From contig NW_026782224.1 of NCBI RefSeq assembly GCF_031769215.1, positions 1,736,001 to 1,800,000 of the forward strand: a stretch of DNA of 64,000 bases. The letters are read 5' to 3'. Shown in pieces: positions 3,960 through 32,300 of the stretch. Under the pieces are notes generated by a model. It was not told where the DNA came from. It worked only from the letters and a program-made list of their open reading frames with translations, and did no database searches. Numbering within the stretch: the first letter of the stretch is position 1; each line of letters starts with the position of its first letter. The DNA is from Ylistrum balloti. Taxonomy: Eukaryota. The translations under genes and the position numbers were made by a program.

Positions 3960-5736
3960 GTGATTGTGTTGTAGAGTAGTCTGTATGGTGACTTCCTGTA
4001 CACTGTATGGTTCAGTGGTTGTGTTGTAGAGCAGTCTGTATTGTGACTTCCTGTACACTGTATGGTTCAGTGGTTGTGTTGTAGAGCAGTCTGTATGGTG
4101 ACTTCCTGTACACTGTATGGTTCAGTGGTTGTGTTGTAGAGTAGTCTGTATGGTGACTTCCAGTACACTGTATGGTTCAGTGGTTGTGTTGTAGAGCAGT
4201 CTGTATGGTGACTTCCTGTAGACTGTATGGTTCAGTGATTGTGTTGTAGAACGGTCTGTATGGTGACTTCCTGTTGACTGTATGGTTCACTGGTCATGTT
4301 GTAGAGCAGTCTGTGTATGGTGACTTCCTGTACACTGTATGGTTCAGTGGTTTTTTTTAGAGCAGTCTGTATGGTGACTTCCTGTACACTGTATGGTTCA
4401 GTGGTTGTGTTGTAGACCAGTCTGTATGGTGACTTCCTGTACACTGTATGGTTCAGTGGTTGTGTTGTAGACCAGTCTGTATGGTGACTTCCTGTACACT
4501 GTATGGTTCAGTGGTTGTGCTGTAGAGCAGTCTGTATGGTGACTTCCTGTAGACTGGGTGACTTCCTGTAGACTGTATGGTTCAGTGGTCGTGTTGTAGA
4601 GCAGTCTGTATTGTGACTTCCTGTACACTGTATGGTTCAGTGGTTGTGTTGTAGAGCAGTCTGTATGGTGACTTCCTGTACACTGTATGGTTCAGTGGTT
4701 GTTTTTTTAGAGCAGTCTGTATGGTGACTTCCTGTACACTGTATGGTTCAGTGGTTGTGTTGTAGACCAGTCTGTATGGTGACTTCCTGTACACTGTATG
4801 GTTCAGTGGTTGTGTTGTAGACCAGTCTGTATGGTGACTTCCTGTACACTGTATGGTTCAGTGGTTGTGTTGTAGAGCAGTCTGTATGGTGACTTCCTGT
4901 AGACTGGGTGACTTCCTGTAGACTGTATGGTTCAGTGGTCGTATTGTAGAGCAGTCTGTATTGTGACTTCCTGTAGACTGTATGGTTCAGTGGTTGTGTT
5001 GTAGAGCAGTCTGTATGGTGACTTCCTGTACACTGTATGGTTCAGTGGTTGTGTTGTAGACCAGTCTGTATGGTGACTTCCTGTACACTGTATGGTTCAG
5101 TGGTTGTGTTGTAGAGCAGTGTGTATTGTGACTTCCTGTACACTGTATGGTACAGTGGTTGTGTTGTAGAGCAGTGTGTATTGTGACTTCCTGTACACTG
5201 TATGGTTCAGTGGTTGTGTTGTAGAGCAGTGTGTATTGTGACTTCCTGTACACTGTATGGTTCAGTGGTTGTATTGTAGAGCAGTGTGTATTGTGACTTC
5301 CTGTACACTGTATGGTTCAGTGGTTGTGTTGTAGAGCAGTCTGTATTGTGACTTCCTGTACACTGTATGGTTCAGTGGTTGTGTTGTAGAGCAGTCTGTA
5401 TGGTGACTTCCTGTACACTGTATGGTTCAGTGGTTGTGTTGTAGAGCAGTCTGTATGGTGACTTCCTGTACCCTGTATGGTTCAGTGGTTGTGTTGTAGA
5501 GCAGTCTGTATTGTGACTTCCTGTAGACTGGGTGACTTCCTGTAGACTGTATGGTTCAGTGGTTGTGTTGTAGAGCAGTCTGTATGGTGACTTCCTGTAG
5601 ACTGGGTGACTTCCTGTAGACTGTATGGTTCAGTGGTTGTGTTGTAGAGCAGTCTGTATTGTGACTTCCTGTAGACTGTATGGTTCAGTGGTTGTGTTGT
5701 AGAGCAGTCTGTATTGTGACTTCCTGTAGACATGGT
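3960..5736 (-). repeat. 55-bp minisatellite, ~32 copies, made of the last 52 nt of the FAM114A CDS including the stop codon
   Basis: Minus-strand unit ACCAT(ACA)GTCTACAGGAAGTCACAATACAGACTGCTCTACAACACAACCACTGA equals ...P C L Q E V T I Q T A L Q H N H * plus a 3-nt insert. Period 55 (4021 vs 4076). Confidence 0.95.
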
Positions 5737-8700
5737 AGTAGTAATTGGAAGGCGTCCTGTATGTAAGTACTACTATTTCCTGCCTGTAACAGAAAGTTGA
5801 TTTATTTATGTTTAGTTATACATGTACTGTATTGTTTTCTTATACATATATTTTGTGATCACCATTTATCAATAAATTTGATTAAAAGAATGAAGATGTG
5901 GATGCACCTAAATATGCAGGCAAATCTGAATACACTGAAACAGAATGGAACTTTACTTCTAGGTTAACATAAGTGACTTAAGTAAAATAACACATATAGT
6001 ATTCAGAATGGACATTTACTTCCAGGAAAACATACAGATATACAGAATGGAAATTTACTTCCAGGAAAACATACAGATATACAGAATGGAAATTTACTTC
6101 CTGGAAAACATGAAGATATACAGAATGGACATTTACTTCCAGGAAAACATACAGATATACAGAATGGACATTTACTTCCAGGAAAACATGAAGATATACA
6201 GAATGGACATTTACTTCCAGGAAAACATGAAGATATACAGAATGGAAATTTACTTCCAGGAAAACATGAAGATATACAGAATGGAAATTTACTTCCTGGA
6301 AAACATGAAGATATACAGAATGGAACCTTACCTCCAGGTAGATATTGGTGACCAAAGTGTTGATATCACTGCTATCCTTGTCCCCCTCCCCCTGTTAAAC
6401 CAAAAACTTGACTTTAACTAGTAACAGTGTAATGTAACTTTAGACCAAACAATACTGTACAAAAAAACATTTGTAAAATGAAATACTTCAAATTTAAACT
6501 CAAAATTTGAAAAAGTAAAACATTGCTGAAATGTATCTGTAAAGTAAATTGATTGTAAATGATGAAATTGTGGCTAATCAAATGTTCAGAACGTCGGAGG
6601 TTTTTAACAAAGGTTTCACTCCTTTCTGTTACAAGGCTTTTTAGAAATTTTGACAAGGATACTCACAGCCATTGTGTTGAGGATGGATGTAAATCTCACA
6701 GATAAAATTCCCACTTCTGTACACAGGACATTTGTTAGACTGTAAATAATGTAAGTCTACATACAATTCCTGCTAAATAGTATCTACATGTATATATATT
6801 TTATTCTGCCATTGTCAGAATATACCTGCTACATATACTTTTGCTGTATTCGGCTGTGACCTAATCTGACAGAATCACTTTCAGAATATACTTTAATATT
6901 ACATTTAGAAATATAAATAGTTGTTGAAATGAGCAATTTTACATATTGTGAATAACAAGTTGATTTATGAAAATGCATAAAATTGCTAGTACATTGGCTG
7001 AAGTATGGATTTATATTTCTGCATGGAGCAATTCTTTTGTCGTCTGTCATGCTCAGCGTAACGTCAACATCAGGTAAACAGAGATAGAACAACAAAACTG
7101 TTTCACTTTCAATCAACGTTGCAGGATAAATAGAATACATGGTCAGTGCCTTAAAATATCAGCTGTATTTTGGCTCAGGACAGAAAGACAAAAGCGGCTC
7201 ACCACTTAGTTGTTCTTCACCCTTGCCAACATGCAGCTTATATCTTAAGACACTGACCATGTATTCCCTATATATTTGTTTTTGTTTCTGAGATTTTCTT
7301 CACAACATGGTAAGACTGTGAGTGAGGATTTGTTCATCATAATTGGAAACAGGAAAGTTTGAGGATGATTTACAAGGTTTGGTGACAGTGAGAATAGTAT
7401 CATAGAAATGGAGCTGAGAGTTAAACCAGGATGTTTTACAAACAAACTGACAAGGCAAACACTTACAGCCAGTTCCATTGACCACAAAAAGTTGTTGAGG
7501 AGATTACTCACTTAGAAAGACTGGTGGCACGCTCCAGACACTGTTTATCTGAGTGTTGTTGTAGCAGGATTAGCTCCCCTGCTTTATGGAACTGTTCCAC
7601 TGACTTTGATGTCAGTTCTGCAAGTGACTGTATAGCCACCTGGTGAACAGCCTACAACAAAAGACAGACAACTCTTTAAAGTCAAACTCAACACAAAGAT
7701 ACAACTCTTTTGTAAAAATTACTGATTGTGTGAAGAAATAATTAAAATAGAAATAAAATCTATACTACAGAACTTCAATGTTTCATCAGAAACTGGAAAA
7801 AACTGACAAACTTTTTTTCCCCTAATCCTGTCATGATTTACTGATATATGAATACATGAATAATGATTCCTCATCCGAAGTTTGATTTCCAATCAAATAT
7901 AATGAGACAATTAATAAAGCTTTTTTTGCAGTACTTCGGTTTACACTACAAGTGACCACATCATCACAAATAGAAAATCCCGCAATAAAGCACCTTGGGC
8001 TTGGCCCGCTCTCCTTCCTCTTCCTCCTTCTTTGTACACAACTCACTGATACTTTGGCGGATTTTTTCATGGCTCTGAAACAGAGAAAATATCCCATCAA
8101 TTAGTTTCAAGGTTTGGCTACACTTACAGAGATGAGGTGACACACCCAAAGTCATCCAGCTGTACTGTTAGTATCAGCTGAGAGAACACAAATATTTCTT
8201 AAAACAATCAATACACTTGTACCTATTTCTTTAAGCGCTGAAAGCACCGACAGATGACTGACACAGTATCAAACTTAAAACTGATGATGAGGATTGGAAG
8301 CTTTCAAGTACTTAGTCAACCACGATAATTATTTGCAGGTGTGCTTCAAGTGTCAAAAGTAAACATTTAATGAGGGCGACATCTGACAAAATGTACAGGA
8401 ATCAATCCACATTGTTTGTTTATATATTTGTGGTTATCTGTGGAAAGAGCTTTCTCCTAGCCAGTTCATACAGCCATATGTGTATACAAAATAAATACCA
8501 ACTGTACTTCTACTCAGTCTGCTGTGTGTTTAACTTATACCGTACATCAAGTTCTCTGGGTACCCAATTACCAAGGAAACCAAGGACTAACTGGATCTGT
8601 CACCAAGGAATTAATAAGTGTACCTTCCAAATTTGCCAAGATTGAGTACTTGAGATAATGAGCAGAGTGGTAGAAGATCTAAACAAGATTGTTTGATCAT

Positions 8701-11700
8701 TAATCTACAGGGGTGCATTATTCTTTTAAAAAGAGTCAAAACACAACATTGCTTGAGGCTAACACAACAAAGTAAAGATTTTTTTTTTTTTATTTAAAGA
8801 GGTTTGAAATGCAAAATTATGAAAAGGACAACAACACATGGTACTGGCATTTTACACAATGTAAAACAAATACATTGAAGGATTAGTGAATGCATATCCA
8901 CAGTTGTTTTTTCAAGAAGGGACATAACTCCCTTCAAAAGGGACAAAATTACAAAATCACTCCAGGTGGCACAACCCCATAGGGTACTAGTACATAACAA
9001 AAATGTACAAGAAAATACATCAGAAAATTAGCAAAAGCATAACCAGACAAAGATACATCTTGACCTTATAGGAAACCTTTAGAATTTAAGGTTTTTCTTT
9101 GTTAAATTCAGATATAAATGACTGCATAAATACAAATTATCTCTACATTAACATATAAATAGTTATTTGTTCATGATCCAATCAGAAACAGATTTTATTA
9201 ATCAAAACCAAATTGGATACACATATTATCAGCAACAAACCTAGTTTGCCAGGGTTAAGTACCCTGACCAAGTTTTAGTGGAGACAAACCTGACTTACCC
9301 TTTTTAGTTTTCCAGGATCAGTTCCTAAACCAAGGTTTAGTGGAGACAAACCTGACTTACCCTGTTTAGTTTTCAAGGATCAGTTCCTAAACTAAGGTTT
9401 AGTGGAGACAAACCTGACTTACCCTTTCCAGTTTTCCAGGATCAGTTCCTAGACCAAGGTTTAGTGGAGACAAACCTGACTTACCCTGTTTAGTTTTCCA
9501 GGATCAGTTCCTAAACCAAGGTTTAGTGGAGACAAACCTGACTTACCCTGTTTAGTTTTCCAGGATCAGTTCCTAGACCAAGGTTTAGTGGAGACAAACC
9601 TGACTTACCCTGTTTAGTTTTCCAGGATCAGTTCCTAGACCAAGGTTTAATGGAGACAAACCTGACTTACCCTTTCCAGTTTTCCAGGATCAGTTCCTAG
9701 ACCAAGGTTTAGTGGAGACAAACCTGACTTACCCTGTTTAGTTTTCCAGGATCAGTTCCTAGACCAAGGTTTAGTGGAGACAAACCTGACTTACCCTGTC
9801 TAGTTTTCCAGGATCAGTTCCTAGACCAAGGTTTAGTGGAGACAAACCTGACTTACCCTTTTTAGTTTTCCAGGATCAGTTCCTAGACCAAGGTTTAGTG
9901 GAGACAAACCTGACTTACCCTTTTTAGTTTTCCAGGATCAGTTCCTAGACCAAGGTTTAGTGGAGACACACCTGACTTACCCTGTTTAGTTTTCCAGGAT
10001 CAGTTCCTAGACCAAGGTTTAGTGGAGACAAACCTGACTTACACTGTTTAGTTTTCCAGGATCAGTTCCTAGACCAAGGTTTAGTGGAGACAAACCTGAC
10101 TTACCCTTTTTAGTTTTCCAGGATCAGTTCCTAGACCAAGGTTTAGTGGAGACAAACCTGACTTACCCTGTTTAGTTTTCCAGGATCAGTTCCTAGACCA
10201 AGGTCTAGTGGAGACAAACCTGACTTACCGTGTTTTAGTTTTCCAGGATCAGTTCCTAGACCAAGGTTTAATGGAGACAAACCTGACTTACCCTGTTTAG
10301 TTTTCCAGGAACAGTTCCTAGACCAAGGTTTAATGGAGACAAACCTGACTTACACTTTTTAGTTTTCCAGGATCAGTTCCTAGACCAAGGTTTAGTGGAG
10401 ACAAACCTGACTTACCCTGTTTAGTTTTCCAGGATCAGTTCCTAGACCAAGGTTTAATGGAGACAAACCTGACTTACCCTTTTTAGTTTTCCAGGATCAG
10501 TTCCTAGACCAAGGTTTAGTGGAGACAAACCTGACTTACCCTTTTTAGTTTTCCAGGATCAGTTCCTAGACCAAGGTTTAGTGGAGACACACCTGACTTA
10601 CCCTGTTTAGTTTTCCAGGATCAGTTCCTAGACCAAGGTTTAGTGGAGACAAACCTGACTTACACTGTTTAGTTTTCCAGGATCAGTTCCTAGACCAAGG
10701 TTTAGTGGAGACACACCTGACTTACCCTGTTTAGTTTTCCAGGATCAGTTTCTAGACCAAGGTTTAGTGGAGACAAACCTGACTTACCCTTTCCAGTTTT
10801 CCAGGATCAGTTCCTAGACCAAGGTTTAGTGGAGACACACCTGACTTACTCTTTTTAGTTTTCCAGGATCAGTTCCTAGACCAAGTTTTAGTGGAGACAC
10901 ACCTGACTTACCCTTTCCAGTTTTCCAGGATCAGTTCCTAGACCAAGGTTTAGTGGAGACAAACCTGACTTACCCTTTCCAGTTTTCCAGGATCAGTTCC
11001 TAGACCAAGGTTTAGTGGAGACACACCTGACTTACTCTTTTTAGTTTTCCAGGATCAGTTCCTAGACCAAGGTTTAGTGGAGACACACCTGACTTACCCT
11101 TTCCAGGTTTCCAGGATCAGTTCCTAGACCAAGGTTTAGTGGAGACACACCTGACTTACCCTTTCCAGTTTTCCAGGATCAGTTCCTAGACCAAGGTTTA
11201 GTGGAGACAAACCTGACTTACCCTTTTTAGTTTTCCAGGATCAGTTCCTAGACCAAGGTTTAGTGGAGACACACCTGACTTACCCTGTTTAGTTTTCCAG
11301 GATCAGTTCCTAGACCAAGGTTTAGTGGAGACAAACCTGACTTACCCTTTCCAGGATCAGTTCCTAGACCAAGGTTTAGTGGAGACACACCTGACTTACC
11401 CTGTTTAGTTTTCCAGGATCAGTTCCTAGACCAAGGTTTAGTGGAGACAAACCTGACTTACCCTTTCCAGTTTTCCAGGATCAGTTCCTAGACCAAGGTT
11501 TAGTGGAGACAAACCTGACTTACCCTTTCCAGTTTTCCAGGATCAGTTCCTAGACCAAGGTTTAGTGGAGACAAACCTGACTTACCCTGTTTAGTTTTCC
11601 AGGATCAGTTCCTAAACCAAGATTAGTGGAGACAAACCTGACTTACCCTGTTTAGTTTTCCAGGATCAGTTCCTAGACAAAGGTTTAGTGGAGACAAACC

Positions 11701-14700
11701 TGACTTACCCTTTTTAGTTTTCCAGGATCAGTTCCTAGACCAAGGTTTAGTGGAGACAAACCTGACTTACCCTGTTTAGTTTTCCAGGATCAGTTCCTAG
11801 ACCAAGGTTTAGTGGAGACAAACCTGACTTACCCTTTTTAGTTTTCCAGGATCAGTTCCTAGACCAAGGTTTAGTGGAGACAAACCTGACTTACCCTGTT
11901 TAGTTTTCCAGGATCAGTTCCTAGACCAAGGTTTAGTGGAGACAAACCTGACTTACCCTTTCCAGTTTTCCAGGATCAGTTCCTAGACCAAGGTTTAGTG
12001 GAGACAAACCTGACTTACCCTTTTTAGTTTTCCAGGATCAGTTCCTAGACCAAGGTTTAGTGGAGACAAACCTGACTTACTCTTTTTAGTTTTCCAGGAT
12101 CAGTTCCTAGACCAAGGTTTGCTAAGTCATCAGTCACCAGCTTCACAAAGTCTTGGTCCTCTGTCTCTTCTGAAATACATACATCAACTAAAGGGTTGGT
12201 AAATAGCCTGTGTATAAGAAGTTTACATGAAAGTTGTACCGGATTGTCTAAATACAAAAATAGCATTTTCACAACTAAATAAAAACTTCAAGGATTAAAA
12301 CAAACATTTCAAAAGCTACAAACCATCTTCACTATTTTCGTCTCTTTCAAACACCTGTTTGATTCTGATGAGGTCTGCCTTGATGTCGGCAAGTGTGTCG
12401 GCTGGCATTGATGTCAGAAGTGTCTGAACTTTCTTCTCACACTGATTGGACAGGATCTCTAGAGCCTCCAGGTGAGCTAGGCCTGAATAAAGGCAAACAT
12501 AGACTCAAATGTCTATATCCTACAAACTAACCTCCAGGTGAGTTAGGCCTGAATAAAGGTAAACATAGACTCAAATGTCTATACCCTACAAACTAACCTC
12601 CAGGTGAGCTAGGCCTGAATAAAGGTAAACATAGACCCCAAGGGATCTATATCCTACAAACCACCATTTGAGGATCTGTTTTCAGTTCTTGAAGATTTGT
12701 TTATTTTTTTTTTGTTTGTTACCAGGTGTTGTAAATGTTCATGAACTGGTCTTCATTGAATGTACTCAATGATGGCACAAGATATTTTTATTAAGCACCT
12801 ATTAGCAAATATCATTTGAAAAAGATCCCAAAGTATTATTAGATAGCAGTCAGTTACAGGTGGATAATGGACAATATGCTTGTGCTGTATTACTGTTGTA
12901 AGATGGCTGCCTGTGGGCCAACTTGATTTCAAATCAGTCCAAAAAAGGTACAATGCACAACTAGGGATGAAGGGAAACCAATATCTATGAAATATCAGAA
13001 GTATCCATCCAGGATTTCCTCAGATATAGCAGTAACAAGATTTTACTCTCAAAATCCAAGATGGCTGCCTGTCAGCCATCTTGATTTCGGATCAGTCCAA
13101 AAAGGTACAATGCACAACTTGGAACCAAAGAGAACCTGCATATGAAATTTGAGAAAGATCCATCCAGTACTTTTCAAGAAATAGCAGTAACAAACTTTTA
13201 CATTCAAAATCCAAGATGGCCACCTGTCTGCCATCTTGAATTTGAATCAGTCCAAAAAAGGTACAATGCACAACTAGGGAACAAGGGGAAACTGCATAGA
13301 AATTTGAGAAAGATCCATCCAGTACTTTCCAAGAAATAGCAGTAACAAACTTTTACTTCCAAAATCCAAGATGGCTGCCTGTCGGCCATCTTGAATTCGA
13401 ATCAGTTCAAAAAAGGTACAGTGCACAACTAGGAACCAAGGGGAACCTGTATATGAAATTTGAGAAAGATCCATCCAGTACTTTCCAAGAAATAGCAGTA
13501 ACAAACTTTTACTTCCAAAATTCAAGATGGCTGCCTGTCTGCCATCTTGAATTCGAATCAGTCCAAAAAAGGTACAATGCACAACTAGGGACCAAGGGGA
13601 AACTGTATATGAAATTTGAGAAAGATCCATCGGGAACTTTCCAAGAAATAGCGGTAACAAAGTTTTACTTCCAAAATCCAAGATGGCCACCTGTCGGCCA
13701 TCTTGAATTCGAATCAGTCCAAAAAAGGTACAATGCACAACTAGGGACCAAGGGGAAACTGTATATGAAATTTGAGAAAGATCCATCGGGAACTTTCCAA
13801 GAAATAGCGGTAACAAAGTTTTACTTCCAAAATCCAAGATGGCCACCTGTCGGCCATCTTGAATTCGAATTAGTCCAAAAAAGGTACAATGCACAACTAG
13901 GGACCAAGGGGAACCTGTATATGAAATTTGAGAAAGATCCATCCAGTACTTTTCCAGAAATAGCGATAACAAGAATTGTTTACGGACGGACGGACGGACG
14001 GACCACGGACGCAGGGCGATTTGAATAACCCACCATCTATTAGATAGATGGTGGGCTAATAAATATAGACTCAAATGTCTATATCCTACAAACTAACCTC
14101 CAGGTAAACTAGGCCTGAATAAAGATAAATATAGACTCAAATGTCTATACCCTACAAACTAACCTCCAGGTGAGCTAGGCCTGAATTGAGGTAAAATAAC
14201 CTAAGTTGGCTACCCTACAAACAAGACATGTAGATACATGTTTGAAATCTATATCTAGATCATTGATATGCCTATTATATTGTCTTACATGGGACAGAGA
14301 GTGACAATAGAAAATGTCTCCATGCATGTCCACTTGTCTGTAATACTTGCAGAAAACATGTTGTTTTTCAGTTCTTTAATTACGAGTGATATTTGGGAGG
14401 TAATGTCAAAGCAAAATCGCAACAAAAACATAACACAAACCCAAGGTGACTCATCTCTAAATTTACCTTGATATTCATTAAACATAAACCCATAGTGACT
14501 CATCTCTAAATTTACCTTGATATTCATCAAACATAAACCCACAGTGACTCATCTCTAAACTTACCTTGATATTCATCAAACATAAACCCAAGGTGACTCA
14601 TCTCTAAACTTACCTTGATATTCATCAAACATAAACCCAAGGTGACTCATCTCTAAACTTACCTTGATATTCATCAAACATAAACCCAAGGTGCCTCATC

Positions 14701-17700
14701 TCTAAACTTACCTTGATATTCATCAAACATAAACCCAAGGTGCCTCATCTCTAAACTTACCTTGATATTCATCAAACATAAACCCAAGGTGACTCATCTC
14801 TAAACTTACCTTGATATTCATCAAACATAAACCCAAAGTGACTCATCTCTAAACTTACCTTGATATTCATCAAACATAAACCCAAGGTGCCTCATCTCTA
14901 AACTTACCTTGATATTCATCAAACATAAACCCAAGGTGACTCATCTCTAAACTTACCTTGATATTCATCAAACATAAACCCAAAGTGACTCATCTCTAAA
15001 TTTACCTTGATATTCATCAAACATAAACCCAAGGTGACTCATCTCTAAACTTACCTTGATATTCATCAAACATAAACCCACAGTGACTCATTTCTGAATT
15101 TACCTTGATATTCATCACGCATACACCCATAGTGACTCATCTCTAAATTTACCTTGATATTCATCAAACATAAACCCACAGTGACTCATCTCTAAACTTA
15201 CCTTGATATTCATCAAACATAAACCCAAGGTGACTCATCTCTAAACTTACCTTGATATTCATCAAACATAAACCCAAGGTGACTCATCTCTAAACTTACC
15301 TTGATATTCATCAAACATAAACCCAAGGTGACTCATCTCTAAACTTACCTTGATATTCATCAAACATAAACCCAAGGTGCCTCATCTCTAAACTTACCTT
15401 GATATTCATCAAACATAAACCCAAGGTGACTCATCTCTAAACTTACCTTGATATTCATCAAACATAAACCCAAGGTGACTCATCTCTAAACTTACCTTGA
15501 TATTCATCAAACATAAACCCAAAGTGACTCATCTCTAAATTTACCTTGATATTCATCAAACATAAACCCATAGTGACTCATCTCTAAATTTACCTTGATA
15601 TTCATCAAACATAAACCCAAAGTGACTCATCTCTAAATTTACCTTGATATTCATCAAACATAAACCCAAGGTGACTCATCTCTAAATTTACCTTGATATT
15701 CATCAAACATAAACCCAAGGTGACTCATTTCTGAATTTACCTTGATATTCATCATGCATACACCCATAGTGACTCATCTCTAAACTTACCTTGATATTCA
15801 TCAAACATAAACCCAAAATGAGCCTTCTGTGCTTCTTCTGATTCTTTTTCTATCTCAATACGCTTAGCCGAATCCTCTTTAGCTTCTCGCAGAATCTGGG
15901 AAAGATTTGGTTTATCTCCACGGTGAAACAACACTTCCTTTGTCTTACGAAGACCAGGGTCATGGTCTTTGATGACATCATATGTCTTTTTACCAATGGT
16001 TTCCAAAACATCCAAACTCCCAGTCACCAAGGTTTTACTCTACCAAACAAGCACAACATCTAATTAGGGACCAGGTCAACATCTAAGTAAGTTCACAGTA
16101 TACTACAGACTTTATGTTCCTAACTGCAAAATCTCAAGGCTCAAAACAATTCCATTCACAGTCTACGTTGTAGACGGTGGAAGAAGGGGGATGGGATAGA
16201 GGTGGAGTTGACTGTTCTGTGGTGTAGACAGTGGGAGAAAGGGGATGAGATAGAAATGGAGTTGACTGTTCTGTGTTGTAGACAGTGGGAGAAAGGGAAT
16301 GAGATAGAGATGGAGTTGACTGTTCTGTGGTGTAGACAGTGGGAGAAAGGGGATGAGATAGAGATGGAGTTGACTGTTCTGTGGTGTAGACAGTGGGAGA
16401 AAGGGGATGGGATAGAGATGGAGTTGACTGTTCTGTGGCGTAGACAGTGGGAATAAGGGGATGAGATAGAGATGGAGTTGACTGTTCTGTGGTGTAGACA
16501 GTGGGAGAAAGGGGATGAGATAGAGATGGAGTTGACTGTTCTGTGGTGTAGACAGTGGGAGAAAGGGGATGGGATAGAGATAGAGATGGAGTTGAGATGG
16601 AGTTGACTGTTCTGTGGTGTAGACAGTGGGAGAAAGGGGATGGGATAGAGATGGAGTTGACTGTTCTGTGGTGTAGACAGTGGGAGAAAGGGGATGAGAT
16701 AGAGATGGAGTTGACTGTTCTGTGGTGTAGACAGTGGGAGAAAGGGGATGGGATAGAGATGGAGTTGACTGTTCTGTGGTGTAGACAGTGGGAGAAAGGG
16801 GAGAAAGGGGATGGGATAGAGATGGAGTTGACTGTTCTGTGGTGTAGACAGTGGGAGAAAGGGGATGGGATAGAGATGGAGTTGACTGTTCTGTGGTGTA
16901 GACAGTGGGAGAAAGGGGATGGGATAGAGATGGAGTTGACTGTTCTGTGGTGTAGACAGTGGGAGAAAGGGGATGAGATAGAGATGGAGTTGACTGTTCT
17001 GTGGTGTAGACAGTGGGAGAAAGGGGATGAGATAGAGATGGAGTTGACTGTTCTGTGGTGTAGACAGTGGGAGAAAGGGGATGGGATTATGGAGTTGACT
17101 GTTCTGTGGTGTAGACAGTGGGAGAAAGGGGATGGGATAGAGATGGAGTTGACTGTACTGTGGTGTAGACAGTGGGAGAAAGGGGATGGGATTATGGAGT
17201 TGACTGTTCTGTGGTGTAGACAGTGGGAGAAAGGGGATGGGATAGAGATGGAGTTGACTGTACTGTGGTGTAGACAGTGGGAGAAAGGGGATGGGACAGA
17301 GATGGATTTTACTGTACTGGTGTTGTAGAGAGTGAGAGGAAAGAGACAGGGTAGGCAGTAGGGAATCAGAATCTGAGTTCGTGAGTGTCTGGACTGGTGT
17401 TTTAATTTTATTGTATGTAATTTTAAACATCAGAGAAAGATGGGCACTCTTCCATCTATTGGTGAGTTCTATTCAGTAATATTAGACTTTGTGACTCAGG
17501 GGATACTTATTTTACTGGCATACATACACTTTGTGAGAAAGTTTTGGAAACAAATAAACTTCTAAAATCTATGGCAATAAACCTGTGCGTATTGAAGTTG
17601 ACAGGTCAGTGAAGATAAGAACACTAATTATTTCAAGTTTAAAGTACTAACCGTGTTCTGTACCATGTTGGTGGTGTTCTGTACCACTGAGGTCAAGCCT

Positions 17701-20700: not shown

Positions 20701-23195
20701 CTGTACACATACAACATCACCTATATACATACAACATTACCTGTACACATACATCACCATCTGTACACATACAATTCCACCTGTACACATACAACACCAC
20801 ATGTATACATACAAGATCACTTTACTTACAATATCATCTGTACACATACAATACCACCTGTACACATACAACACCACCTGTATACATACATCACCATCTG
20901 TACACATACAACATCACCTGTTTACAAAAAAACACCACCTGTGTTTATACACTACACATGTACACATACATCACTTGTACAAAAATAACATCACCAGTAC
21001 ATTAGTGTCTGTGTTTTACTGTACGTACCAACTTGACTGGTGAAGGTGGATACTGAATGTGATGCTACACTCATCAAGGATGACCCCCAGTTACCCCAGG
21101 AACTCCAACCATCAGAGGCTGGTGACTACAATTAAGTAAAAAGTCAAAAGAATTCAAAAGCATATTTCAATACACTGTAAATCACTTAAATTTGGTATTT
21201 ATTTTCACATTAATATGAAAGCAGAGCCAATCACTAATTAGCCTTTATCTGTATGAATCTCTTGATGAGATCTGTGTTACCACCTTGTTAATTTTCTTTT
21301 AATTCTGTTCATGCTTCTGATGAATTTATATACCGGTATTCCTTATCATATCATCACAAAAAAAATTGCTCTATGTATATCATTAACAAATTCAATCATC
21401 TTCAGAACTCTGTACTTTAAATGACACCCCCTATTGCTGACTTTTAGAACTTCTGTACAGCTATTATTCAGAGGTTGGAGGTTCAGTACATGTGCCACAA
21501 AAGATATTATTTCTCGATGCTATTTTTGTGTTCGAAAAGGTACTAAAATATTTACAATAACAGACTTTATAACATACAAAATATCTATCTGATTAAATTA
21601 CAAAATAAGCAAGAGGAAAAACAGTTAAGGACATTATATTACTGCTTGGATGATTACTGTACAAGTAGTGTGAACATGTTGCGAACGTTAAACACAATAT
21701 GTCTGAGATGTGGAAGTGTGGAGTGTTTACATTTGTGTCTTTGGTCTATGTTCTAGCTTGTACTCAGCTAAATATAGTTCAGTATGGACACAACATGTAT
21801 CACATGACTAAATCACTTTTCAGGCATAGTCACATGACTCCCTTAAGCAAAATGGCAGCCATAGGAAGCTATCGGTTACCGATACAGCAGTTCCCAGAGT
21901 CTGTAACTCTTGTAGCTTATCATTCGTAAATTCAAAGTCATTTCTAGACCAGCATTCCCGAAATCATGTTTTCATGAATATGTCTGCAGAGGTGGTTTTG
22001 TGAAATAAAGCATTTGCAAAATCAAAGTGATTTACAATAATGTTAATGTGCACACAGTGTTCTACTGGTTTCCATAGAAATTAAATGTTCAGTAATTTTC
22101 CTTTAGATTTAAAGAGTTTTATTAGTAATACATATCTCTTGTATATAATCATCTTAATGGAAGTAATACAGACATCACATTCACAGGAAAAAGATTTAAT
22201 TATGTTTGAAACAAGCTACCAGCAATCAATGTATGTCATCATTTCATAACATTAAAAAAGTTCTATTTTTAGAAAAGCTGGATATGACTGGCTAGAAGAA
22301 GATGGCTGTTACAGAAAGTGATCAAGTCTTTTATTGAATAAATGTAGATTAAACCAAAAGTTAAAATTAAAAGTATCAACAAGAATTATTTTGTAAGGCT
22401 AAGGGAACCATGCCACAAGAATCTGGGGTGTGCTATTTAAAATATACTCCAGGTCTCTGTTTGTTATCATTACATAATGATAAAAATCATTCAAGTTAAT
22501 CTTTTAATAATACACACTTGTTTTTTCTCTTCAACTTTCTTCTGTGCACTTAATTCCTCTGAATGTTTGGAAGGAACATTATCTACATTCTTTCTTGTAT
22601 CTTTCTGGGGAGTTGTTTCCCTTGACCTTTGGGTAGTCATCTCTTCTGCAGTATGAGTAGTTGTTTCCCCTTGTGAATTTTTCTCCTCTGCTTTTGTGAG
22701 CTGTGCTGATGTTTGAGGCTTTGACTCAGTAATATCTGGTTTATCCTCATGTTTATCCCTTTCAATGTCCACTTGTTTTTTATGATCACCCGTAACTGGA
22801 CTTAATGATTCAGAAGAATCACCTGATTGTTTAGTTTTTCCCTTGGAAGGTAAACCTGACCCCAACTTTGGAGCCTGAGATTTATTAGCAGTATTTGTTT
22901 TTGCCTTTTTATCTGTGGATTTTGCTGTTTCCTTTTTTCCATTACCAGGCTTATCTTTATTTACATTTTTCTGTGGAATTTTCTTCTGAGAATCTTTACT
23001 GCTTGCACCTTTTTTGCTTTCTTTTTCTTCTGTTTTACTTGTTTTTGAAGTACTTGTCACTGTAGCACTTTTACCAGAAATGTTTCCATCAGATTTATTA
23101 GTTTTTGTTGCTTTAGTTTCTGGATGTGAACTTTTCTCTTTTGGCAAACCATCGCCTTCATCTGCACTTGCAAACTCATCCTCAGAATCTGACAT
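5685..23195 (-). CDS. FAM114A2: FAM114A-family protein (FAM114A2/NOXP20-like), 14 coding exons, ~768 aa
   Basis: Exons (minus): 23195-22518, 21125-21029, 19347-19213, 19120-18983, 18059-17925, 17824-17652, 16039-15790, 12482-12324, 12169-12081, 8074-7994, 7651-7512, 6739-6667, 6391-6332, 5783-5685. All GT-AG with consistent phases; total 2307 nt. Motifs DGWSSWGNWGSSLMS, VQNT-SKTLVTGSLDVLETIGKKT...DPG, [45 protein letters not shown] and GNSSTYIQDAFQLLLP match recalled human FAM114A1/2. A1 vs A2 cannot be assigned. Probable non-coding exon 1 donor at 23872. Confidence 0.92.
5995..6338 (-). repeat. 39-bp minisatellite (8 extra copies) containing the 5' splice site of FAM114A exon 6391-6332
   Basis: Real donor CCTGGAG|GTAAGGTTCCATTCTGTATAT; copies CC(A/T)GGAA|GTAAAT(T/G)TCCATTCTGTATAT. 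Open reading frame through the array (ORF 5978-6355). Confidence 0.9.
9270..12120 (-). repeat. 62-bp minisatellite, ~46 copies, containing the 3' 40 nt of exon 12169-12081 plus its 5' splice site
   Basis: Minus unit AAACCTTGGTCTAGGAACTGATCCTGGAAAACTAAA(C/A)AG(G/A)|GTAAGTCAGGTTTGTCTCCACT. Period 62 (9481 vs 9543). Confidence 0.97.
12465..14190 (-). repeat. 66-bp repeat containing the 3' splice site of FAM114A exon 12482-12324; 5 copies, split by a ~1.4-kb insert
   Basis: Acceptor TTCAG|GCCTA.. with exon-like starts at 12482 (real), 12548, 12614, 14114 and 14180. Spacing is 66 within each block. Confidence 0.9.
12760..14063 (-). mobile_element. pearl/DINE-1/HINE-type non-autonomous element with seven ~156-bp tandem core repeats
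   Basis: Core AAGATGGC(T/C)(G/A)CC...GCCATCTTG at 12900, 13058, 13213, 13368, 13524, 13680, 13836. (ACGG)5 at 13982-14002. 12-bp-stem hairpin CCCACCATCTAT-tag-ATAGATGGTGGG at 14029-14055, then A-rich AATAAA. This modular layout is that of oyster pearl (CvA) and Helentron-associated elements. Left boundary approximate. Confidence 0.8.
14440..15817 (-). repeat. 49-bp minisatellite, ~28 copies, containing the 3' end of exon 16039-15790 plus its 5' splice site
   Basis: Minus unit TTGGGTTTATGTTTGATGAATATCAAG|GTAA(G/A)TTTAGAGATGAGTCAC(C) (GFMFDEYQG|). Period 49 (14581 vs 14630). Confidence 0.97.
16190..17325. repeat. 54-bp purine/G-rich intronic minisatellite, ~21 copies
   Basis: Unit GAGATGGAGTTGACTGTTCTGTGGTGTAGACAGTGGGAGAAAGGGGATG(G/A)GATA; lies in the FAM114A intron 16040-17651. 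Confidence 0.95.
18165..18752. repeat. 27-bp intronic minisatellite with 54-bp dimeric higher order, ~21 units
   Basis: ACAGG(A/T)AATGACACTGT(C/G)A(C/T)CTCTATA; the two variants alternate. Confidence 0.93.
19500..20990. repeat. 20-bp intronic minisatellite, ~70 copies, degenerating toward 21 kb
   Basis: ACATACAACA(C/T)CACCTGTA(T/C). Confidence 0.93.
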
Positions 23196-23872: not shown

Positions 23873-24393
23873 CTGACCAGCTTCTAACGATCTGTCAGTT
23901 GCTTCTCTCCCCAATATGAATGCACTAGCTACAGGTGAAATTGAAATCGAATTTATGACATTAAAACACCGAATGTGTTTATATAGTTCTGAAATATTAG
24001 TCAGAACCGTTCACATACCGTCTGTTTTAATCAGGCCACGTCAACTTTGTCAGCGAAATATATTTTCTTAACGTAACTTAACTGCTTGTTGTACCTTTTA
24101 CGTTGTATGGTCCATGAAAACATTTTATTGATGCAGAAGAGTTATTAATTAACAGTACTCAAAACAAGTAAGTCAGATTACATTGTATAGTTTTCGATAT
24201 CGTTATAAATCGAAATTACTAAAATACAAGCAGAAATATCATATGGATAAATTATACGTCTTTATTGGTAAGAAATAGTCACTGGCTTCTCTCCGACGAT
24301 AGGACTTTATTAATGCTGTAACATGTAGCTCGAACTTGTTCGGTTCGCCTATCAAAATTTGATTCTCGTGTTAGGTAAAATAATAAAATCAAG
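23873..24393. promoter_or_regulatory. Putative bidirectional promoter FAM114A (minus) / ZMAT2 (plus)
   Basis: Minus-strand donor GGTCAG|GTACCG at 23873/23872 and ZMAT2 ATG at 24394. The interval retains CpG relative to its flanks. No TSS data. Confidence 0.5.
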
Positions 24394-27214: not shown

Positions 27215-27895
27215 CAAAGAGATTATCACCAGTGTGTTAGTGGACAATATTAATTCTACTTCAGTGTTTTAGCTGTGTGGGCTTTGATCAAGAACATCAG
27301 ATAAAATATAGATACACAAATGGACAAACATGTTATAGTTTGGCAGAGTTCCTTATGTATACATCATTTAATCTAAACAAAAGCAGATTTCATTGCATTT
27401 TATTTATAATTTAAAACATGTCATTTATGATGTCAGATTTTGGACATCACAAATAGTAGATCAGAAGCAGTACACTAGTGTATTATATTCACTCTGGATC
27501 ATGGAATCAAATATATGTCATTTTTCACTCAAGTCTCAATAAGGTAAGCATAGGCTATTTTGGGGACTAGAATATTACCAATGCTGTCTGAACCACTGAG
27601 AAAAATGTAGCAACCTCATAATGGTACAAAAATCATTTAATCAGTAACTGTGTTTGAAGATCCTTGGTGCCACAAATAGTTAAAGGTTTAGTTGGTCAAT
27701 TAATATTCTCTGTATAGTTTAAGGATGAAGTCTGTCGCGCCATAAGGTAATACATTATGATCTATTGTTAATTAGTAAAAAGATGTGTGAAAGTGTGTAG
27801 AGGAAGTGTATATTGAAGTTGCTTGAGCAAGAGAATGAGGTGAAACATATTTTTTTGTTCAATATTTGTATAGGTCCATTTTATGCGATATGTGT

Positions 27896-27901
27896 AATAA
27901 A
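27896..27901 (+). terminator. Candidate AATAAA polyadenylation signal for ZMAT2
   Basis: AATAAA about 680 nt after the stop, followed by T/GT-rich sequence. Motif only. Confidence 0.3.
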
Positions 27902-27964
27902 ATATCTTTTTGGTGGATGAACAATTTTGTTAACTTCTTTAAATCAAGATGTGGTGAAACAGAA

Positions 27965-28275
27965 AAGTTAAACTGGACCTAAGACAGTGGTCAGTTTTAA
28001 GTTAACCTGGACCTAAGACAGTGGTCAGTTTTAAGTTAACCCGGACCTAAGACAAGTGGTCACTTCTAGGTTAACCTAGACCTAAGACAGTGATCAGTTG
28101 TAAGTTAACCTGGACCTAAGACAGTGGTCAGTTCTAAATTAACCTGGACCTAAGATAGTGGTCACTTTTAAGTTAACCTGGACCTAAGACAGTGGTCACT
28201 TCTAAGTTAACCTGGACCTAAGATAGTGGTCACTTTTAAATTAACCTGGAACTAAGACAGTGGTCAGTTTTAAGG
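27965..28275. repeat. ~34-35-bp minisatellite, ~9 copies
   Basis: TTAAGTTAACCTGGACCTAAGACAGTGGTCA(G/C)TT. Confidence 0.9.
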
Positions 28276-29209
28276 TAATCAAAATCTTGTGCTTTAGCCA
28301 TAGTGACCTATCAACCTGTCAGCTATTCAAATTTTAACAATTAACATAGATTAAAACAGTACCTCAGTATCAACACCTATCATCTTATCTTTATTAGTGG
28401 GAAATTTTCCCTTCTTGTGTCCTCCATCTGATCCTTTCAAAAATGAAATATTCACTACTAGGGACTATGGGGAATCCACATATGAAATTAGTGGTTTACT
28501 AACATATTTGTACCTTGGTGAAATGTAATGACCACATAACTCAGTGGTAGTATTTCTCAAACTTTATTTTAACATCTGACAAAGAATCTAACACAAACTG
28601 TTTCCTTTACTTGAACACTAGTTAAACTCTGATTATAAAATGTAATTGAAATTGAACTACTTGGATCAATTAAGATGGTAAGTGAATGACTACAGCACAT
28701 CTTCATTTACATATAAGTGTAACTTAAAACAATAAAAACAAATAGTAACAATAAACGCTTCAATGACAACATATTTTATATTATCGACAACATAACCTTG
28801 CGTACTGAATAAAAAGTAAACTTGAACATGATGACTAGACTTCATTTGATAGCTGGTGCTTACATACATGTAACAAGACAACAAATCATAAATTTCAAGA
28901 TCAAATGGAAATATTAAGAAAAAAAATTAATCAAAAGAGAATCAACTAAAGAATAATAAAAGCACTGAAATTATTAACTTATAATTTCATTCAACTTTAA
29001 TATTTGTAAATACATAGTCTACAAAATTTCAAGCCCAGTTTGAACTTTAATATAAGTCTTAACACACTTCCCCTCTCCTTGTATCTTGATAGTAATAGAT
29101 TTTCAATAACTGAAATGATATTGTATATCTTAATTCCTTATATAAAATCGCTCATTAATTTCAGTAGTCACTTATTTTCATTGATACGAGTAAACACAGT
29201 ATATATCAC

Positions 29210-29360
29210 CTGAACGTTCAGTGGATGATTTGGATCTTGAACATCCAGTGGATGGCTGGGATCTTGAACATTCAGTGGATGGTTCGGATCTTGAACGTTC
29301 AGTGGATGATTTCGTTCTTGAACATTCAGTTGATGATTTGGATCTTGAACATTCAGTTGA
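29210..29360. repeat. Degenerate 30-bp tandem repeat (~5 copies) just after the orphan gene's stop codon
   Basis: GATCTTGAAC(A/G)TTCAGT(G/T)GATG... recurring every 30 nt. Confidence 0.75.
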
Positions 29361-29382
29361 AAATATATGGATCCTTGAGCAT

Positions 29383-32300
29383 TTAGCAGAAAATATCTTT
29401 GGTTCTGAATAGTTGAGCAAAATTACTGCTTGATTCTTTGTGAGAACTTGCCAACATCCTGAAATTGGAGTAACATTGTTATTACAACTATATTGTACAC
29501 ATACACTTTAAAAAAGACTTCAGTTTCAGCTTCTAACGATATGAATGCTAGCAGCCTTTTGTGTTAGTTCATAAACCAACATTTTCTCTTATTCATGTTC
29601 TGCCAGACAAGGTTGTTTTCAACTACAGGGACTTCCAGACATTTACATGCTATAGAGCTATACAGAAATGTTAAGTAATTTACTGCACGGTCAAAATGGC
29701 AACAGACAGAGCAGTTTGCATCAGACTTCAGACTTTTTATACCAAAACCATCTCGGCAAAATTAAATATCCAAAAGGCTTTGAAGAAATTATTTTTAAAC
29801 AGAACTTCTTGTGCACAAATTAAACTTATTGATGATTTTTTTTTAACTGCTATGATTTAAAAGTAAAGGAATTCTTTATTCTTAGTATTCAAATTTAGAC
29901 TAAAATAATACCTTTTGGATATTCTATCACCATCCACCTGTCCTCTTTCCTTTCAAAATTAACACACCAAAATGCAAGTTCTCCAATCATTTATCAATGA
30001 ACCACTGTATTTGTCATCCCCACAACCCTGATGTATAAATATTTAGGTGAATATGTAGCAATGTTTTGGACAATCAGAAACCTTTATTTTTTTCCATGGA
30101 AACTATCAGGAATAACCAATTTTTATAAGCCAATTTAAAGGCTATGTTACAATGATTATCAAAATAAATAATATTGATAATATTGATGAAAGGAGTTATG
30201 GCCCTTTTTATGAAAATCTCTGTGTAGTGACATTGTCATTTTGGCAACCAAAATTTTCCAAAAACAAATGATGTGCTTATATACATATCGTCTGTCATAT
30301 ACTAGTATATTGTTGTTCATCGAAATTGTTGTCAAACATGAAGTTCACAACCAAACTTTAATTCAAAGGTAATGTTTTGGTACTGTGTGACAAGTAAAAG
30401 TAATTCTCAACAGCATTAAATAAAAGGTCTAACAACTGTTTCTTTAAAAGTCAACTCTTACCTTCTAGAGTGTTGAGGTTTCTGTTTATCTGGTGGAGTC
30501 ATATCCCCAAACATCTCACACAGTCCTTGTGTTGCTCCCTGTTAAAGCAATTTAAACAAATCATTATTCTGGTTTTGTATGTTACTGAAAATCTAGACTT
30601 GGCAGGCAAAAAATCATTTATAGGTCTCAGATTCCATAAATACAATGTTATTTGAAAAAAAACAAAACACAAAAAAAACTGGGGGATTTAAAATTAAGTC
30701 AAACTTGTCCATAAAGGCCAACAAGGAAGCAGAAAAAAGGCCAATAACAGCAGATTTGATTGTAGTTCAAACCAACCTCCATCAACAGATCTTCATTACA
30801 ATCCAGGAAATTTGTCTACAGAAACAGACTCCTGTGTACTGACAGTATCTACCTTGTCTATAGATACAGGCTCCTGTCTACTGACAGTACCTACCTTGTC
30901 TATAGATACAGACCCCTTTGTACTGACAGTACCTACCTTGTCTATACAGACCCCTGTGTACTGACAGTACCTACCTTGTCTATAGATACAGACCCCTGTG
31001 TACTGACAGTACCTACCTTGTCTATAGATACAGGCTCCTGTCTACTGACAGTACCTACCTTGTCTATAGATACAGACTCCTGTGTACTGACAGTATCTAC
31101 CTTGTCTATAGATACAGACCCCTGTGTACTGACAGTACTTACCTTGTCTATACAGACCCCTGTGTACTGACAGTACCTACCTTGTCTATAGATACAGGCT
31201 CCTGTCTACTGACAGTACCTACCTTGTCTATAGATACAGACCCCTGTGTACTGACAGTACCTACCTTGTCTATACAGACCCCTGTGTACTGACAGTACCT
31301 ACCTTGTCTATAGATACAGACCCCTGTGTACTGACAGTACCTACCTTGTCTATAGATACAGACCCCTGTGTACTGACAGTACCTACCTTGTCTATAGACA
31401 TCGGTACTGTTGACTGAGAATTTGTAGCAGAGGAATCAGAGGATACACTTGACAACTGAAACAAAATATTCAGAGCAACTAAATCCTAGTCAGAACAGTC
31501 ACTATCAACTGATAGTACAGACACATTTAATAAAAACAAATTATCAGGAACTATGTAGAATTACCCCTCTGCAATCTCTAAAAGTATTGTCAGTCAGTTA
31601 GGAGATGATATTTGAACATTTAATAGACACTTTTTATTTCTATCCTTATCTGATCAAAGTCAAAGTTCAAAGGACAAGCATGTGTAACAGAATTCAGGAT
31701 TTGAACACTAACTGTCTGGCTTTCTAGTCTGATGCTTAACTGTTCGAGCTAAAGAAGTTTTTCAGGCAGAGCAGTGCATTGCCATTAGTAAACCAGAGCA
31801 CCCAGGTTCGCATTCTAGTGGAGGCACATATTAGAGAAATATTTAGATGTTCTTGGAAAAAAAAAATGACAGGACTTGTTTGTTTCAGGTTGACAGTGGA
31901 CTCTTGACAAAAAGCAAAGTGATTTCCTGATGATGTTTGGCTAAAGTCTTCACTTGAACATGTCCATCCTTCAAAAGAGCTTGATAACTACTTAACAAGT
32001 GAAAATAAGGTGGCTAAACCAGTAATACCCACCTGACTGATACCAGACAGAGCTGGCGATAACAACTTGGGAGATGACCTTTCATCCAAATTGTCGTCTC
32101 CCACTGTCTGCTTCATCTTCAGTAATGCCTGCACTAATGCTTTACTGGAATCTGACTGACCAATAAATTCTGATTCAGTCTCATCATCTGAGGAGTCTTC
32201 CATATCATATTCTTCATCCATTATCGTGCAGGAGTCAGAACTAAAGAGCTCACCTGGTTTTACGATAACTTTGTAATTGCTGTAATTTTCAGATGTTTGA

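What the first reader, a model, noticed from the sequence alone, without database searches (positions are those of the whole stretch)
3960..31400. System-level: tandem arrays repeatedly seeded on splice junctions and a stop codon
Seen: five of the eight non-TE arrays inside FAM114A, plus one in the orphan gene, are amplifications of a unit that straddles a functional boundary: stop (55 bp), donors (39, 62, 49, 42 bp) and an acceptor (66 bp). The real exon always supplies the terminal unit. Rough hand estimate: 28 junctions x ~50 bp cover ~17% of ~8 kb of unique gene sequence, so 5 of 8 by chance has P of about 0.005 (small numbers, post hoc). Known: tandem duplication across a splice site is a proposed route to intron gain and new alternative splice sites. 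Inference: either a mutational process (e.g. R-loop or splicing-coupled breaks, slippage, rolling-circle amplification) targets junctions, or junction-spanning duplications are preferentially retained. Either way the spliceosome here must choose among dozens of identical sites. I do not know of a description of this at such density.
Basis: partly seen in the sequence, partly recalled or inferred. Interest (0 to 1): 0.88.

Follow-up and report, generated by a model that had tools for sequence, protein, structure and literature searches.

The report
Splice-junction and stop-codon minisatellites in scallop
In this scallop (Ylistrum balloti), several tandem repeat arrays are amplified copies of a gene's own exon-intron junction or stop codon; this repeat type is already known from amphioxus ("mirages") and some human genes, and here it is real, dense and probably more frequent than chance.

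Summary
The window is Ylistrum balloti. My 14-exon model translates exactly to RefSeq FAM114A2-like.

- **In FAM114A2-like:** five of eight local arrays contain a functional boundary. These are the donors of exons 7, 9 and 13 (49, 62 and 39 bp), the acceptor of exon 8 (66 bp) and the stop codon (55 bp).
- **In the "orphan" gene:** the 42-bp array sits on the exon-3 donor of LOC132553126, which has scallop orthologues.
- **In other scallops:** FAM114A carries independent junction arrays in Argopecten and Pecten. The stop array is shared by four genera and evolves in concert with the coding end.
- **Statistics:** against uniform seeding on array-collapsed genes, 9 of 28 arrays hit splice junctions where 3.0 were expected (P about 0.001). 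Without the discovery gene, P is 0.03. With a GC-weighted null, P is 0.006, or 0.06 for replication. So a 2.4-3-fold excess is suggested but not proven.
- **Prior knowledge:** the kind is already described as amphioxus "mirage" minisatellites and human F7, CBS and IFI6 junction VNTRs.

The scan has flagged the same pattern in many other windows of this genome. The mechanism of any junction bias stays unknown.

The parts
5685..23195 (-). FAM114A2-like coding region, 14 exons: 23195-22518, 21125-21029, 19347-19213, 19120-18983, 18059-17925, 17824-17652, 16039-15790, 12482-12324, 12169-12081, 8074-7994, 7651-7512, 6739-6667, 6391-6332, 5783-5685
   Evidence: The translation is identical to P0216 (Y. 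balloti RefSeq protein). All introns are GT-AG.
3957..5731 (-). 55-bp array, about 32 copies. The unit is the last ~16 codons plus the stop TGA (5687-5685) plus 8 nt. It lies in the presumed 3' UTR.
   Evidence: Homologous 52-bp arrays with the same limits follow the stop codon in Argopecten, Pecten and Mizuhopecten. The CDS end is 96% identical to the species' own array consensus.
6000..6335 (-). 39-bp array, 8.6 copies, starting 4 nt before the exon-13 donor (6332|6331). The decoys read GAA|GTAAAT, weaker than the authentic GAG|GTAAGG. The unit is in frame (+13 aa per unit, no stop).
9267..12123 (-). 62-bp array, 46 copies: 43 nt of the exon-9 end plus the first 19 nt of intron 9. The authentic donor is at 12081|12080.
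   Evidence: Thirty-nine decoys read AGG|GTAAGT; the authentic site reads AGA|GTAAGT. Using a decoy gives an immediate premature stop.
12463..12661 (-). 66-bp array, proximal block, about 3 copies: 46 nt of the intron-7 end plus the acceptor plus the first 20 nt of exon 8. The authentic acceptor is the last one (12483|12482).
14059..14195 (-). 66-bp array, distal block, about 2 copies of the same acceptor-derived unit. The TE-like insertion separates it from the proximal block.
12900..13972 (-). TE-like 156-bp array with a (GTCC)n microsatellite and a hairpin at one flank. It is inserted inside the 66-bp family and is not locally derived.
   Evidence: There is a dispersed partial copy at 62275-62312. 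The same microsatellite-plus-~150-bp-array layout occurs in Argopecten and Pecten.
14432..15821 (-). 49-bp array, 28 copies: the last 32 nt of exon 7 (..FGFMFDEYQG) plus the first 17 nt of intron 7. The authentic donor is at 15790|15789.
   Evidence: Eighteen of 28 sites carry the 9-mer AAG|GTAAGT (the authentic site plus 17 decoys). Using a decoy causes a frameshift and a premature stop.
16167..17343 (-). 54-bp array, purely intronic (intron 6). One of the three non-junction arrays.
18154..18778 (-). 27-bp array, purely intronic (intron 4).
19504..20974 (-). 20-bp array, purely intronic (intron 2). It starts about 50 nt after the donor.
29383..35141 (-).
   Evidence: The translation is identical to P0312. 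Orthologues P0313 (Mizuhopecten) and P0314 (Pecten) exist.
30812..31403 (-). 42-bp array, 14 copies: 17 nt of the exon-3 end plus 25 nt of intron. Eleven of 14 sites carry the authentic 9-mer AAG|GTAGGT.
29209..29396 (-). 27-bp array, about 6-7 copies, starting 11 nt before the stop TAA (29385-29383) of LOC132553126.
   Evidence: A homologous 28-bp x 30 array lies just after the stop in Mizuhopecten.
37161..50050 (+). CFAP97-like gene (exons 37161-38315 and 49667-50050), used as an in-window control. Its 11.3-kb intron holds five arrays, none at a junction.

Best explanation
These are 'mirage'-type minisatellites.

**Origin (inferred).** Short local tandem duplications of 27-95 bp happened to include an exon-intron junction or the stop codon. 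Slippage or unequal exchange then expanded them to as many as 46 copies. This happened in a scallop genome that makes minisatellites at a very high rate.

**Why they are tolerated (partly shown, partly inferred).** The copy contiguous with the rest of the exon keeps working. The annotated mRNA uses the first donor, the last acceptor and the first stop (shown by exact agreement with the RefSeq proteins). Transcripts spliced at decoy donors of the 49-bp and 62-bp arrays meet a premature stop within one unit (shown), so nonsense-mediated decay would remove them (inferred). Choice of the first donor probably follows the oriented, proximal-site rule shown for the human F7 junction minisatellite (by analogy).

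**Turnover (shown at the stop codon).** The coding copy takes part in array turnover. The last codons of FAM114A co-evolve with the 3'-UTR array in four genera.

**Frequency (shown, small numbers).** Junction arrays are about 2.4-3 times more frequent than uniform seeding predicts. Some bias in where arrays arise or how long they last is therefore likely, but it is not proven and its cause is unknown.
For: - **Arrays and limits:**
- **Exact gene models:**
- **Exon and intron parts of the units are ancestral sequence:**
- **Independent junction arrays in the same gene of other scallops:** Argopecten has a 95-bp array on the exon-12 acceptor. Pecten has a 35-bp array on the exon-6 donor, a 52-bp x 47 array on the exon-8 acceptor and an 82-bp array on the exon-9 acceptor.
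- **The exon-8 acceptor was hit twice with different unit limits:** Y. balloti spans -46 to +20; Pecten spans -16 to +36.
- **Shared stop array with the same limits in four genera:** each CDS end is 91-97% identical to its own array, against 75-85% to other species.
- **Decoy counts and reading-frame consequences:**
- **Statistics, uniform null:** 4 of 7 observed against 1.16 expected, P = 0.016, for the discovery gene. Across all ten genes, 9 of 28 against 2.99, P = 0.0012. Without the discovery gene, 5 of 21 against 1.83, P = 0.026.
- **Statistics, GC-weighted null:** 9 observed against 3.69 expected, P = 0.0055.
- **Precedents:** PMC3087553, PMC3902484, PMC1557585.
Against: - The discovery gene was picked post hoc from a very large scan.
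- The replication sets are small: P is 0.03-0.06.
- The GC weighting is itself weakly supported (likelihood ratio 3.3).
- An in-window control gene with a long intron has 0 of 5 arrays at junctions. That matches the null and gives no power.
- Mytilus and Crassostrea FAM114A have almost no arrays.
- One earlier follow-up in this genome judged the frequency compatible with random duplication in short introns.
- No RNA or read data were available. Actual splice-site use and the assembly of the long arrays are therefore unverified.
Confidence: 0.85

Rival explanations
1. Pure chance geometry. Tandem duplications are seeded uniformly. FAM114A has 13 mostly short introns (array-collapsed median about 300 nt), so a 40-90-bp unit hits a junction 10-28% of the time. 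Exon-internal arrays are purged. In a genome this rich in minisatellites, a few genes will show 4-5 junction arrays without any bias.
For: - Per-array junction probabilities are 0.08-0.28 in these genes.
- The replication P values are only 0.03-0.06.
- The long-intron control has 0 of 5 arrays at junctions.
- An earlier follow-up on BAG6 in this genome reached this conclusion.
- The discovery was post hoc.
Against: - Pooled over ten genes the excess is 9 observed against 3.0-3.7 expected, P 0.001-0.006.
- The three other scallops alone give 4 of 9 against 1.36 expected, P = 0.03.
- The same acceptor was hit independently in two genera.
- Two of four stop codons in the window carry arrays. My rough hand estimate is P about 0.05.
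Confidence: 0.4
2. Mutational bias. Tandem duplications start preferentially at or near exon edges. Possible reasons are that exons are GC-richer and give more stable slipped intermediates, or that breaks cluster at nucleosome, transcription or splicing-related boundaries. Arrays wholly inside exons are removed by selection, which leaves junction-spanning survivors.
For: - There is a 2.4-3-fold excess.
- Units of purely intronic arrays tend to be GC-richer than their introns (mean percentile 0.63, beta 4.2).
- Exons have 40-45% GC and introns about 33%.
- Intron 7 and its two junctions carry arrays in three of four scallops.
Against: - GC weighting explains only part of the excess (expectation rises from 3.0 to 3.7).
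- I saw no consistent microhomology at unit limits.
- There is no direct evidence on breaks or R-loops.
Confidence: 0.35
3. Retention bias. Arrays anchored on a selectively constrained copy (an exon end or the stop codon) last longer. The constrained copy cannot decay or be removed by sloppy deletions, and it keeps re-homogenising its neighbours. Standing arrays are therefore enriched at boundaries even if seeding is uniform.
For: - The FAM114A stop array is shared by four genera and the LOC132553126 stop array by two.
- The coding copy is 91-97% identical to its own array, so it takes part in homogenisation.
- The 66-bp array predates a TE insertion.
Against: - Most splice-junction arrays are lineage-specific, not old.
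- Contraction to one copy is equally possible for anchored arrays.
- Decoy splice sites should be mildly harmful rather than favoured.
Confidence: 0.2
4. Assembly artefact. The long, near-identical arrays were inflated or created by the assembler.
For: - Only one Y. balloti assembly is available; L004 is identical to the window.
- The Mizuhopecten stop array has 25 copies at 100% identity, which looks artificial.
Against: - The same class of structure appears in four independently assembled scallop genomes, at orthologous and at new junctions.
- Copies carry structured variants and higher-order periods.
- One array was split by a TE insertion.
Confidence: 0.05

Closest known systems
Amphioxus 'mirage' minisatellites (Adh3, globins BflGb6/BflGb9, troponin C, PGBD5; PMC3087553, PMC3902484; original report Canestro et al. 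2002, not held in the library)
   Same: - Tandem repeats of tens to about 160 bp whose unit spans an exon-intron boundary.
- Both 5' and 3' boundaries can be hit, and several can occur per gene.
- Normal mRNA is still made.
- Evolution is concerted within arrays.
- The mechanism of origin is stated as unclear.
   Different: - The phylum is different (a bivalve mollusc).
- Copy numbers are much higher (28-47, against a few to about ten).
- Arrays also sit on stop codons.
- One array is conserved across four genera.
- This report adds a quantitative test against a seeding null.
Human junction-spanning VNTRs: F7 IVS7 37-bp minisatellite, CBS IVS13, interferon-induced 6-16 gene, LMNB2, PDGF (PMC1557585)
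   Same: - The first monomer spans the exon-donor boundary.
- The authentic 5' splice site is followed by identical pseudo-sites.
- The most upstream site is the one used. In F7 only 4 nt of exon lie in the unit, as in the 39-bp array here.
   Different: - The human cases are single and scattered among genes. Here six to seven lie within 30 kb.
- Up to 45 decoys are present, some a better consensus match than the authentic site.
- Splice-site use here is inferred from annotation only.
Intron gain by tandem duplication of an AGGT-containing exon segment (Rogers model; internal gene duplications, PMC4974935 and reviews such as PMC3443670)
   Same: Tandem duplication that duplicates splice signals inside a gene.
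   Different: No intron was gained. All arrays lie in introns whose positions are conserved in four scallops (14 exons each). The duplications span existing junctions rather than exon interiors.

Membership tests
Mirage / junction-spanning minisatellite | Head-to-tail array of a 10-160-bp unit | tested here: met
   TRF and lag self-matching find periods of 27-66 bp and 3-46 copies.
Mirage / junction-spanning minisatellite | The unit contains both exon-derived and intron-derived sequence, including the splice signal | tested here: met
   The exact exon model set against array limits shows this. The exon parts encode residues conserved in other scallops, and the intron parts match orthologous intron starts. 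The 39-bp array has only 4 nt of exon.
Mirage / junction-spanning minisatellite | Normal mRNA is made from the authentic, exon-contiguous site | tested here: inconclusive
   The RefSeq proteins P0216 and P0312 equal the models that use the first donor, last acceptor and first stop. No RNA reads were available to see use of the decoys.
Mirage / junction-spanning minisatellite | Length instability or polymorphism of the array | not testable with these tools
   Only one assembly of this species is available. Copy numbers of the shared stop array do differ between species: 32, 18, 10 and 32.
Intron gain by tandem duplication (Rogers model) | A new intron, absent from relatives, bounded by duplicated AG|GT sequence | tested here: not met
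   All four scallops have the same 14 coding exons. The arrays lie in pre-existing introns.
Transposon-borne satellite (bivalve MITE/Helitron-like elements with internal ~150-bp repeats) | The unit is unrelated to local unique sequence, and dispersed copies exist elsewhere | tested here: not met
   The junction arrays are copies of the adjacent exon-intron sequence. Only the 156-bp array fits the TE pattern, with a microsatellite flank and a dispersed copy at 62275-62312.

The most novel reading that the evidence does not exclude
Exon boundaries and stop codons are true hotspots for the birth or long-term survival of minisatellites across pectinid genomes. This would make scallops a natural system in which dozens of identical, or better-than-authentic, splice sites are tested in vivo. 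In this reading, boundary-anchored arrays steer protein evolution: the FAM114A C-terminus co-evolves with a 3'-UTR array that has been kept since the common ancestor of four genera.
Probability: 0.3. Interest if true: 0.72.

Novelty: new member of a known kind. Interest (0 to 1): 0.5.

Why it matters
- **Splice-site choice.** If the excess is real genome-wide, it points to a mutational or retention process tied to exon boundaries. It also supplies a rich natural test set for how the spliceosome picks one site among up to 46 equal or stronger copies.
- **Protein evolution.** The stop-codon arrays show that a non-coding minisatellite can drag the last codons of a protein along by concerted evolution.
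- **Annotation.** These arrays are traps for gene prediction and for short-read RNA mapping in bivalve genomes.
- **If the excess is not real.** The finding is then a dense but ordinary by-product of a very high rate of minisatellite birth in short introns.

Tried and rejected
- **First exon coordinates.** I set them by hand from tblastn and two were off by one base (frameshifts). They were fixed.
- **Microhomology at unit limits.** I looked for it using array ends and orthologous array-free introns. Only the 49-bp array ends in an 18-nt imperfect partial copy. There was no general pattern, so I make no claim.
- **Original 'mirage' paper.** I tried to read PMC117041; it is not held.
- **Mollusc literature.** A full-text search for junction minisatellites in scallops found nothing relevant in this library.
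- **TE origin of the junction arrays.** Considered and rejected, because the units are local sequence.
- **Intron gain.** Considered and rejected, because intron positions are conserved.
- **Non-scallop bivalves.** Mytilus and C. virginica FAM114A had too few arrays to be informative.
- **CFAP97 orthologues.** Not fetched. A single long intron gives no power.
- **Stop-codon statistic.** This is only a rough hand estimate (2 of about 8 arrays within 1 kb of collapsed 3' flank against about 0.36 expected, P about 0.05).
Full report
**What is there.**
TRF shows the window is packed with minisatellites, about 30 arrays in 64 kb. A search with one exon found FAM114A/DUF719 relatives. The closest, P0001, is from Argopecten irradians. 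A second search named the species. The CFAP97-like exon is 99% identical to a Ylistrum balloti protein. My hand-refined 14-exon FAM114A model on the minus strand translates to a protein identical to P0216, 'FAM114A2-like [Ylistrum balloti]'. Locus L004, from assembly GCA_031769215.1, has the same arrays as the window.

**Checking the observation.**
I took array limits from self-matching at the repeat period, laid them on the exact exons, and read the sequence directly.
- The 49-bp unit is 32 nt of exon 7 plus 17 nt of intron 7 (28 copies).
- The 62-bp unit is 43 nt of exon 9 plus 19 nt of intron 9 (46 copies).
- The 39-bp array starts 4 nt before the exon-13 donor.
- The 66-bp unit is 46 nt of intron 7, the acceptor and 20 nt of exon 8. 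It forms two blocks, split by a TE-like 156-bp array.
- The 55-bp unit is the last ~16 codons, the TGA and 8 more nt (about 32 copies).

The 54-, 27- and 20-bp arrays are purely intronic. So 5 of 8 holds.

The exon parts encode residues conserved in other scallops. The intron parts match the conserved first 17-19 nt of the orthologous introns. The units are therefore copies of the ancestral junctions, not exons that ran into a repeat.

**The 'orphan' gene.**
The assembly's gene calls place an 838-aa gene here. Its protein, P0312, has orthologues in Mizuhopecten and Pecten. It maps exactly onto five exons. The 42-bp array straddles the exon-3 donor. I also found that the 27-bp array (29396-29209) begins 11 nt before this gene's stop codon, and each unit repeats the end of the CDS. 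Mizuhopecten has a homologous 28-bp x 30 array just after its stop.

**Other scallops.**
I rebuilt exact FAM114A models in Argopecten (L001), Pecten maximus (L002) and Mizuhopecten (L003). All have the same 14 exons.
- None has the 49-, 62-, 39- or 66-bp arrays, so those are lineage-specific in Y. balloti.
- Argopecten has a 95-bp x 2.9 array on the exon-12 acceptor.
- Pecten has a 35-bp x 2.3 array on the exon-6 donor, a 52-bp x 47 array on the exon-8 acceptor and an 82-bp x 1.9 array on the exon-9 acceptor.
- The exon-8 acceptor was therefore amplified twice, with different unit limits.
- All four genera share the stop array with the same limits.
- Each species' CDS end is 91-97% identical to its own array consensus, against 75-85% to other species' arrays or CDS ends.

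The coding copy therefore takes part in array homogenisation, and the protein's last residues differ accordingly.

Mytilus and Crassostrea FAM114A have almost no arrays.

**Is it more than chance?**
I collapsed every array to one unit, removed TE-like arrays, and computed for each array the chance that a segment of its period, placed uniformly, straddles a splice junction. Placements wholly inside an exon were excluded.

| Set | Observed | Expected | P |
|---|---|---|---|
| Y. balloti FAM114A | 4 of 7 | 1.16 | 0.016 |
| Three other scallops, FAM114A | 4 of 9 | 1.36 | 0.032 |
| All ten genes | 9 of 28 | 2.99 | 0.0012 |
| Without the discovery gene | 5 of 21 | 1.83 | 0.026 |
| All ten genes, GC-weighted null | 9 of 28 | 3.69 | 0.0055 |
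| Without the discovery gene, GC-weighted null | 5 of 21 | 2.26 | 0.059 |

Units of intronic arrays are somewhat GC-richer than their introns, which is why I fitted the GC-weighted null on those arrays. The CFAP97-like gene has one 11-kb intron and 0 of 5 arrays at junctions, as expected. The excess is 2.4-3-fold. It is suggestive but not settled, because the discovery was post hoc and the numbers are small.

**How it works.**
The annotated proteins require the first donor, the last acceptor and the first stop.
- In the 49-bp array, 18 of 28 sites carry the authentic 9-mer.
- In the 62-bp array, 39 decoys (AGG|GTAAGT) fit the consensus better than the authentic AGA|GTAAGT.
- Using a decoy in either array gives a stop codon within one unit.
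- The 39-bp ladder is in frame.

In human F7, a 37-bp minisatellite whose first unit spans the exon 7 donor leaves only the most upstream site in use (PMC1557585). I infer the same rule here. No RNA data were available to check it.

**What is known.**
Tandem repeats spanning exon-intron boundaries are described in amphioxus as 'mirages', in several genes and at both boundary types. Their origin is unexplained (PMC3087553, PMC3902484). Junction VNTRs are also known in human F7, CBS, 6-16, LMNB2 and PDGF. I found no mollusc report in the library.

After I had reached this reading, the scan's own notes showed the same pattern flagged in many other windows of this genome. Two follow-ups also cite mirages but disagree on whether there is an excess.

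**Verdict.**
The structure is real and striking. It is a new (molluscan) member of a known kind. Three points are new in degree:
- very high copy numbers;
- arrays on stop codons;
- an array kept across four genera that co-evolves with the coding end.

The proposed junction-targeting process remains a hypothesis with moderate statistical support.

Noticed in passing
window 29209-29396: A 27-bp array starts 11 nt before the stop codon of LOC132553126, and each unit copies the end of the CDS. Mizuhopecten has a homologous 28-bp x 30 array (L005 11710-12563).
   Followed up: yes
window 17925-19347; L001-L003: FAM114A exons 3-4 and 5-6 are an old internal tandem duplication (DGFN.LVDAVETSMGAP..). 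It is present in all four scallops (14 exons). Mytilus and C. virginica have 12 exons.
   Followed up: partly
window 12900-14060: A TE-like element has a 156-bp internal array, a (GTCC)n microsatellite and a hairpin-forming flank. It sits inside the 66-bp acceptor array. The same layout (tetranucleotide microsatellite next to 145-171-bp arrays) occurs in Argopecten and Pecten introns.
   Followed up: partly
L002 9139 and L003 6399 (exon-7 donor): Pecten and Mizuhopecten use a GC donor (G|gcaagt) at exon 7, where Y. balloti and Argopecten have GT. The first ~17 nt of this intron are conserved across the four species, which may mark a splicing control element.
   Followed up: no
intron 7 of FAM114A: window 12483-15789; L002 9139-12008; L003 6399-8990: Intron 7 carries large arrays in three of four scallops: 49 + 66 bp, 52 bp x 47, and 36 bp x 67. 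Argopecten has none. This could be a local hotspot.
   Followed up: partly
window 32880-33109; L005 4061-4216; L006 3827-3935: There is an in-frame 30-bp coding repeat (..SANGNSQSND..) inside exon 2 of LOC132553126. It is present in three scallops with different copy numbers.
   Followed up: no
L001 19359-20100 and 22040-22780: In Argopecten, the exon 12-13 region with its 95-bp acceptor array is duplicated about 2.7 kb downstream, with a TE-like 145-bp array between the copies. The annotated model uses the first copies.
   Followed up: partly
window 38316-49666 and 50239-59916: About half of the CFAP97-like intron consists of five unrelated arrays; one is 40 bp x 81. Seven more arrays fill the stretch between CFAP97 and the ING-like gene that starts near 60.6 kb.
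   Followed up: no
L003 12938-14230: The Mizuhopecten stop array has about 25 copies at 100% identity. This may be an assembly effect.
   Followed up: no
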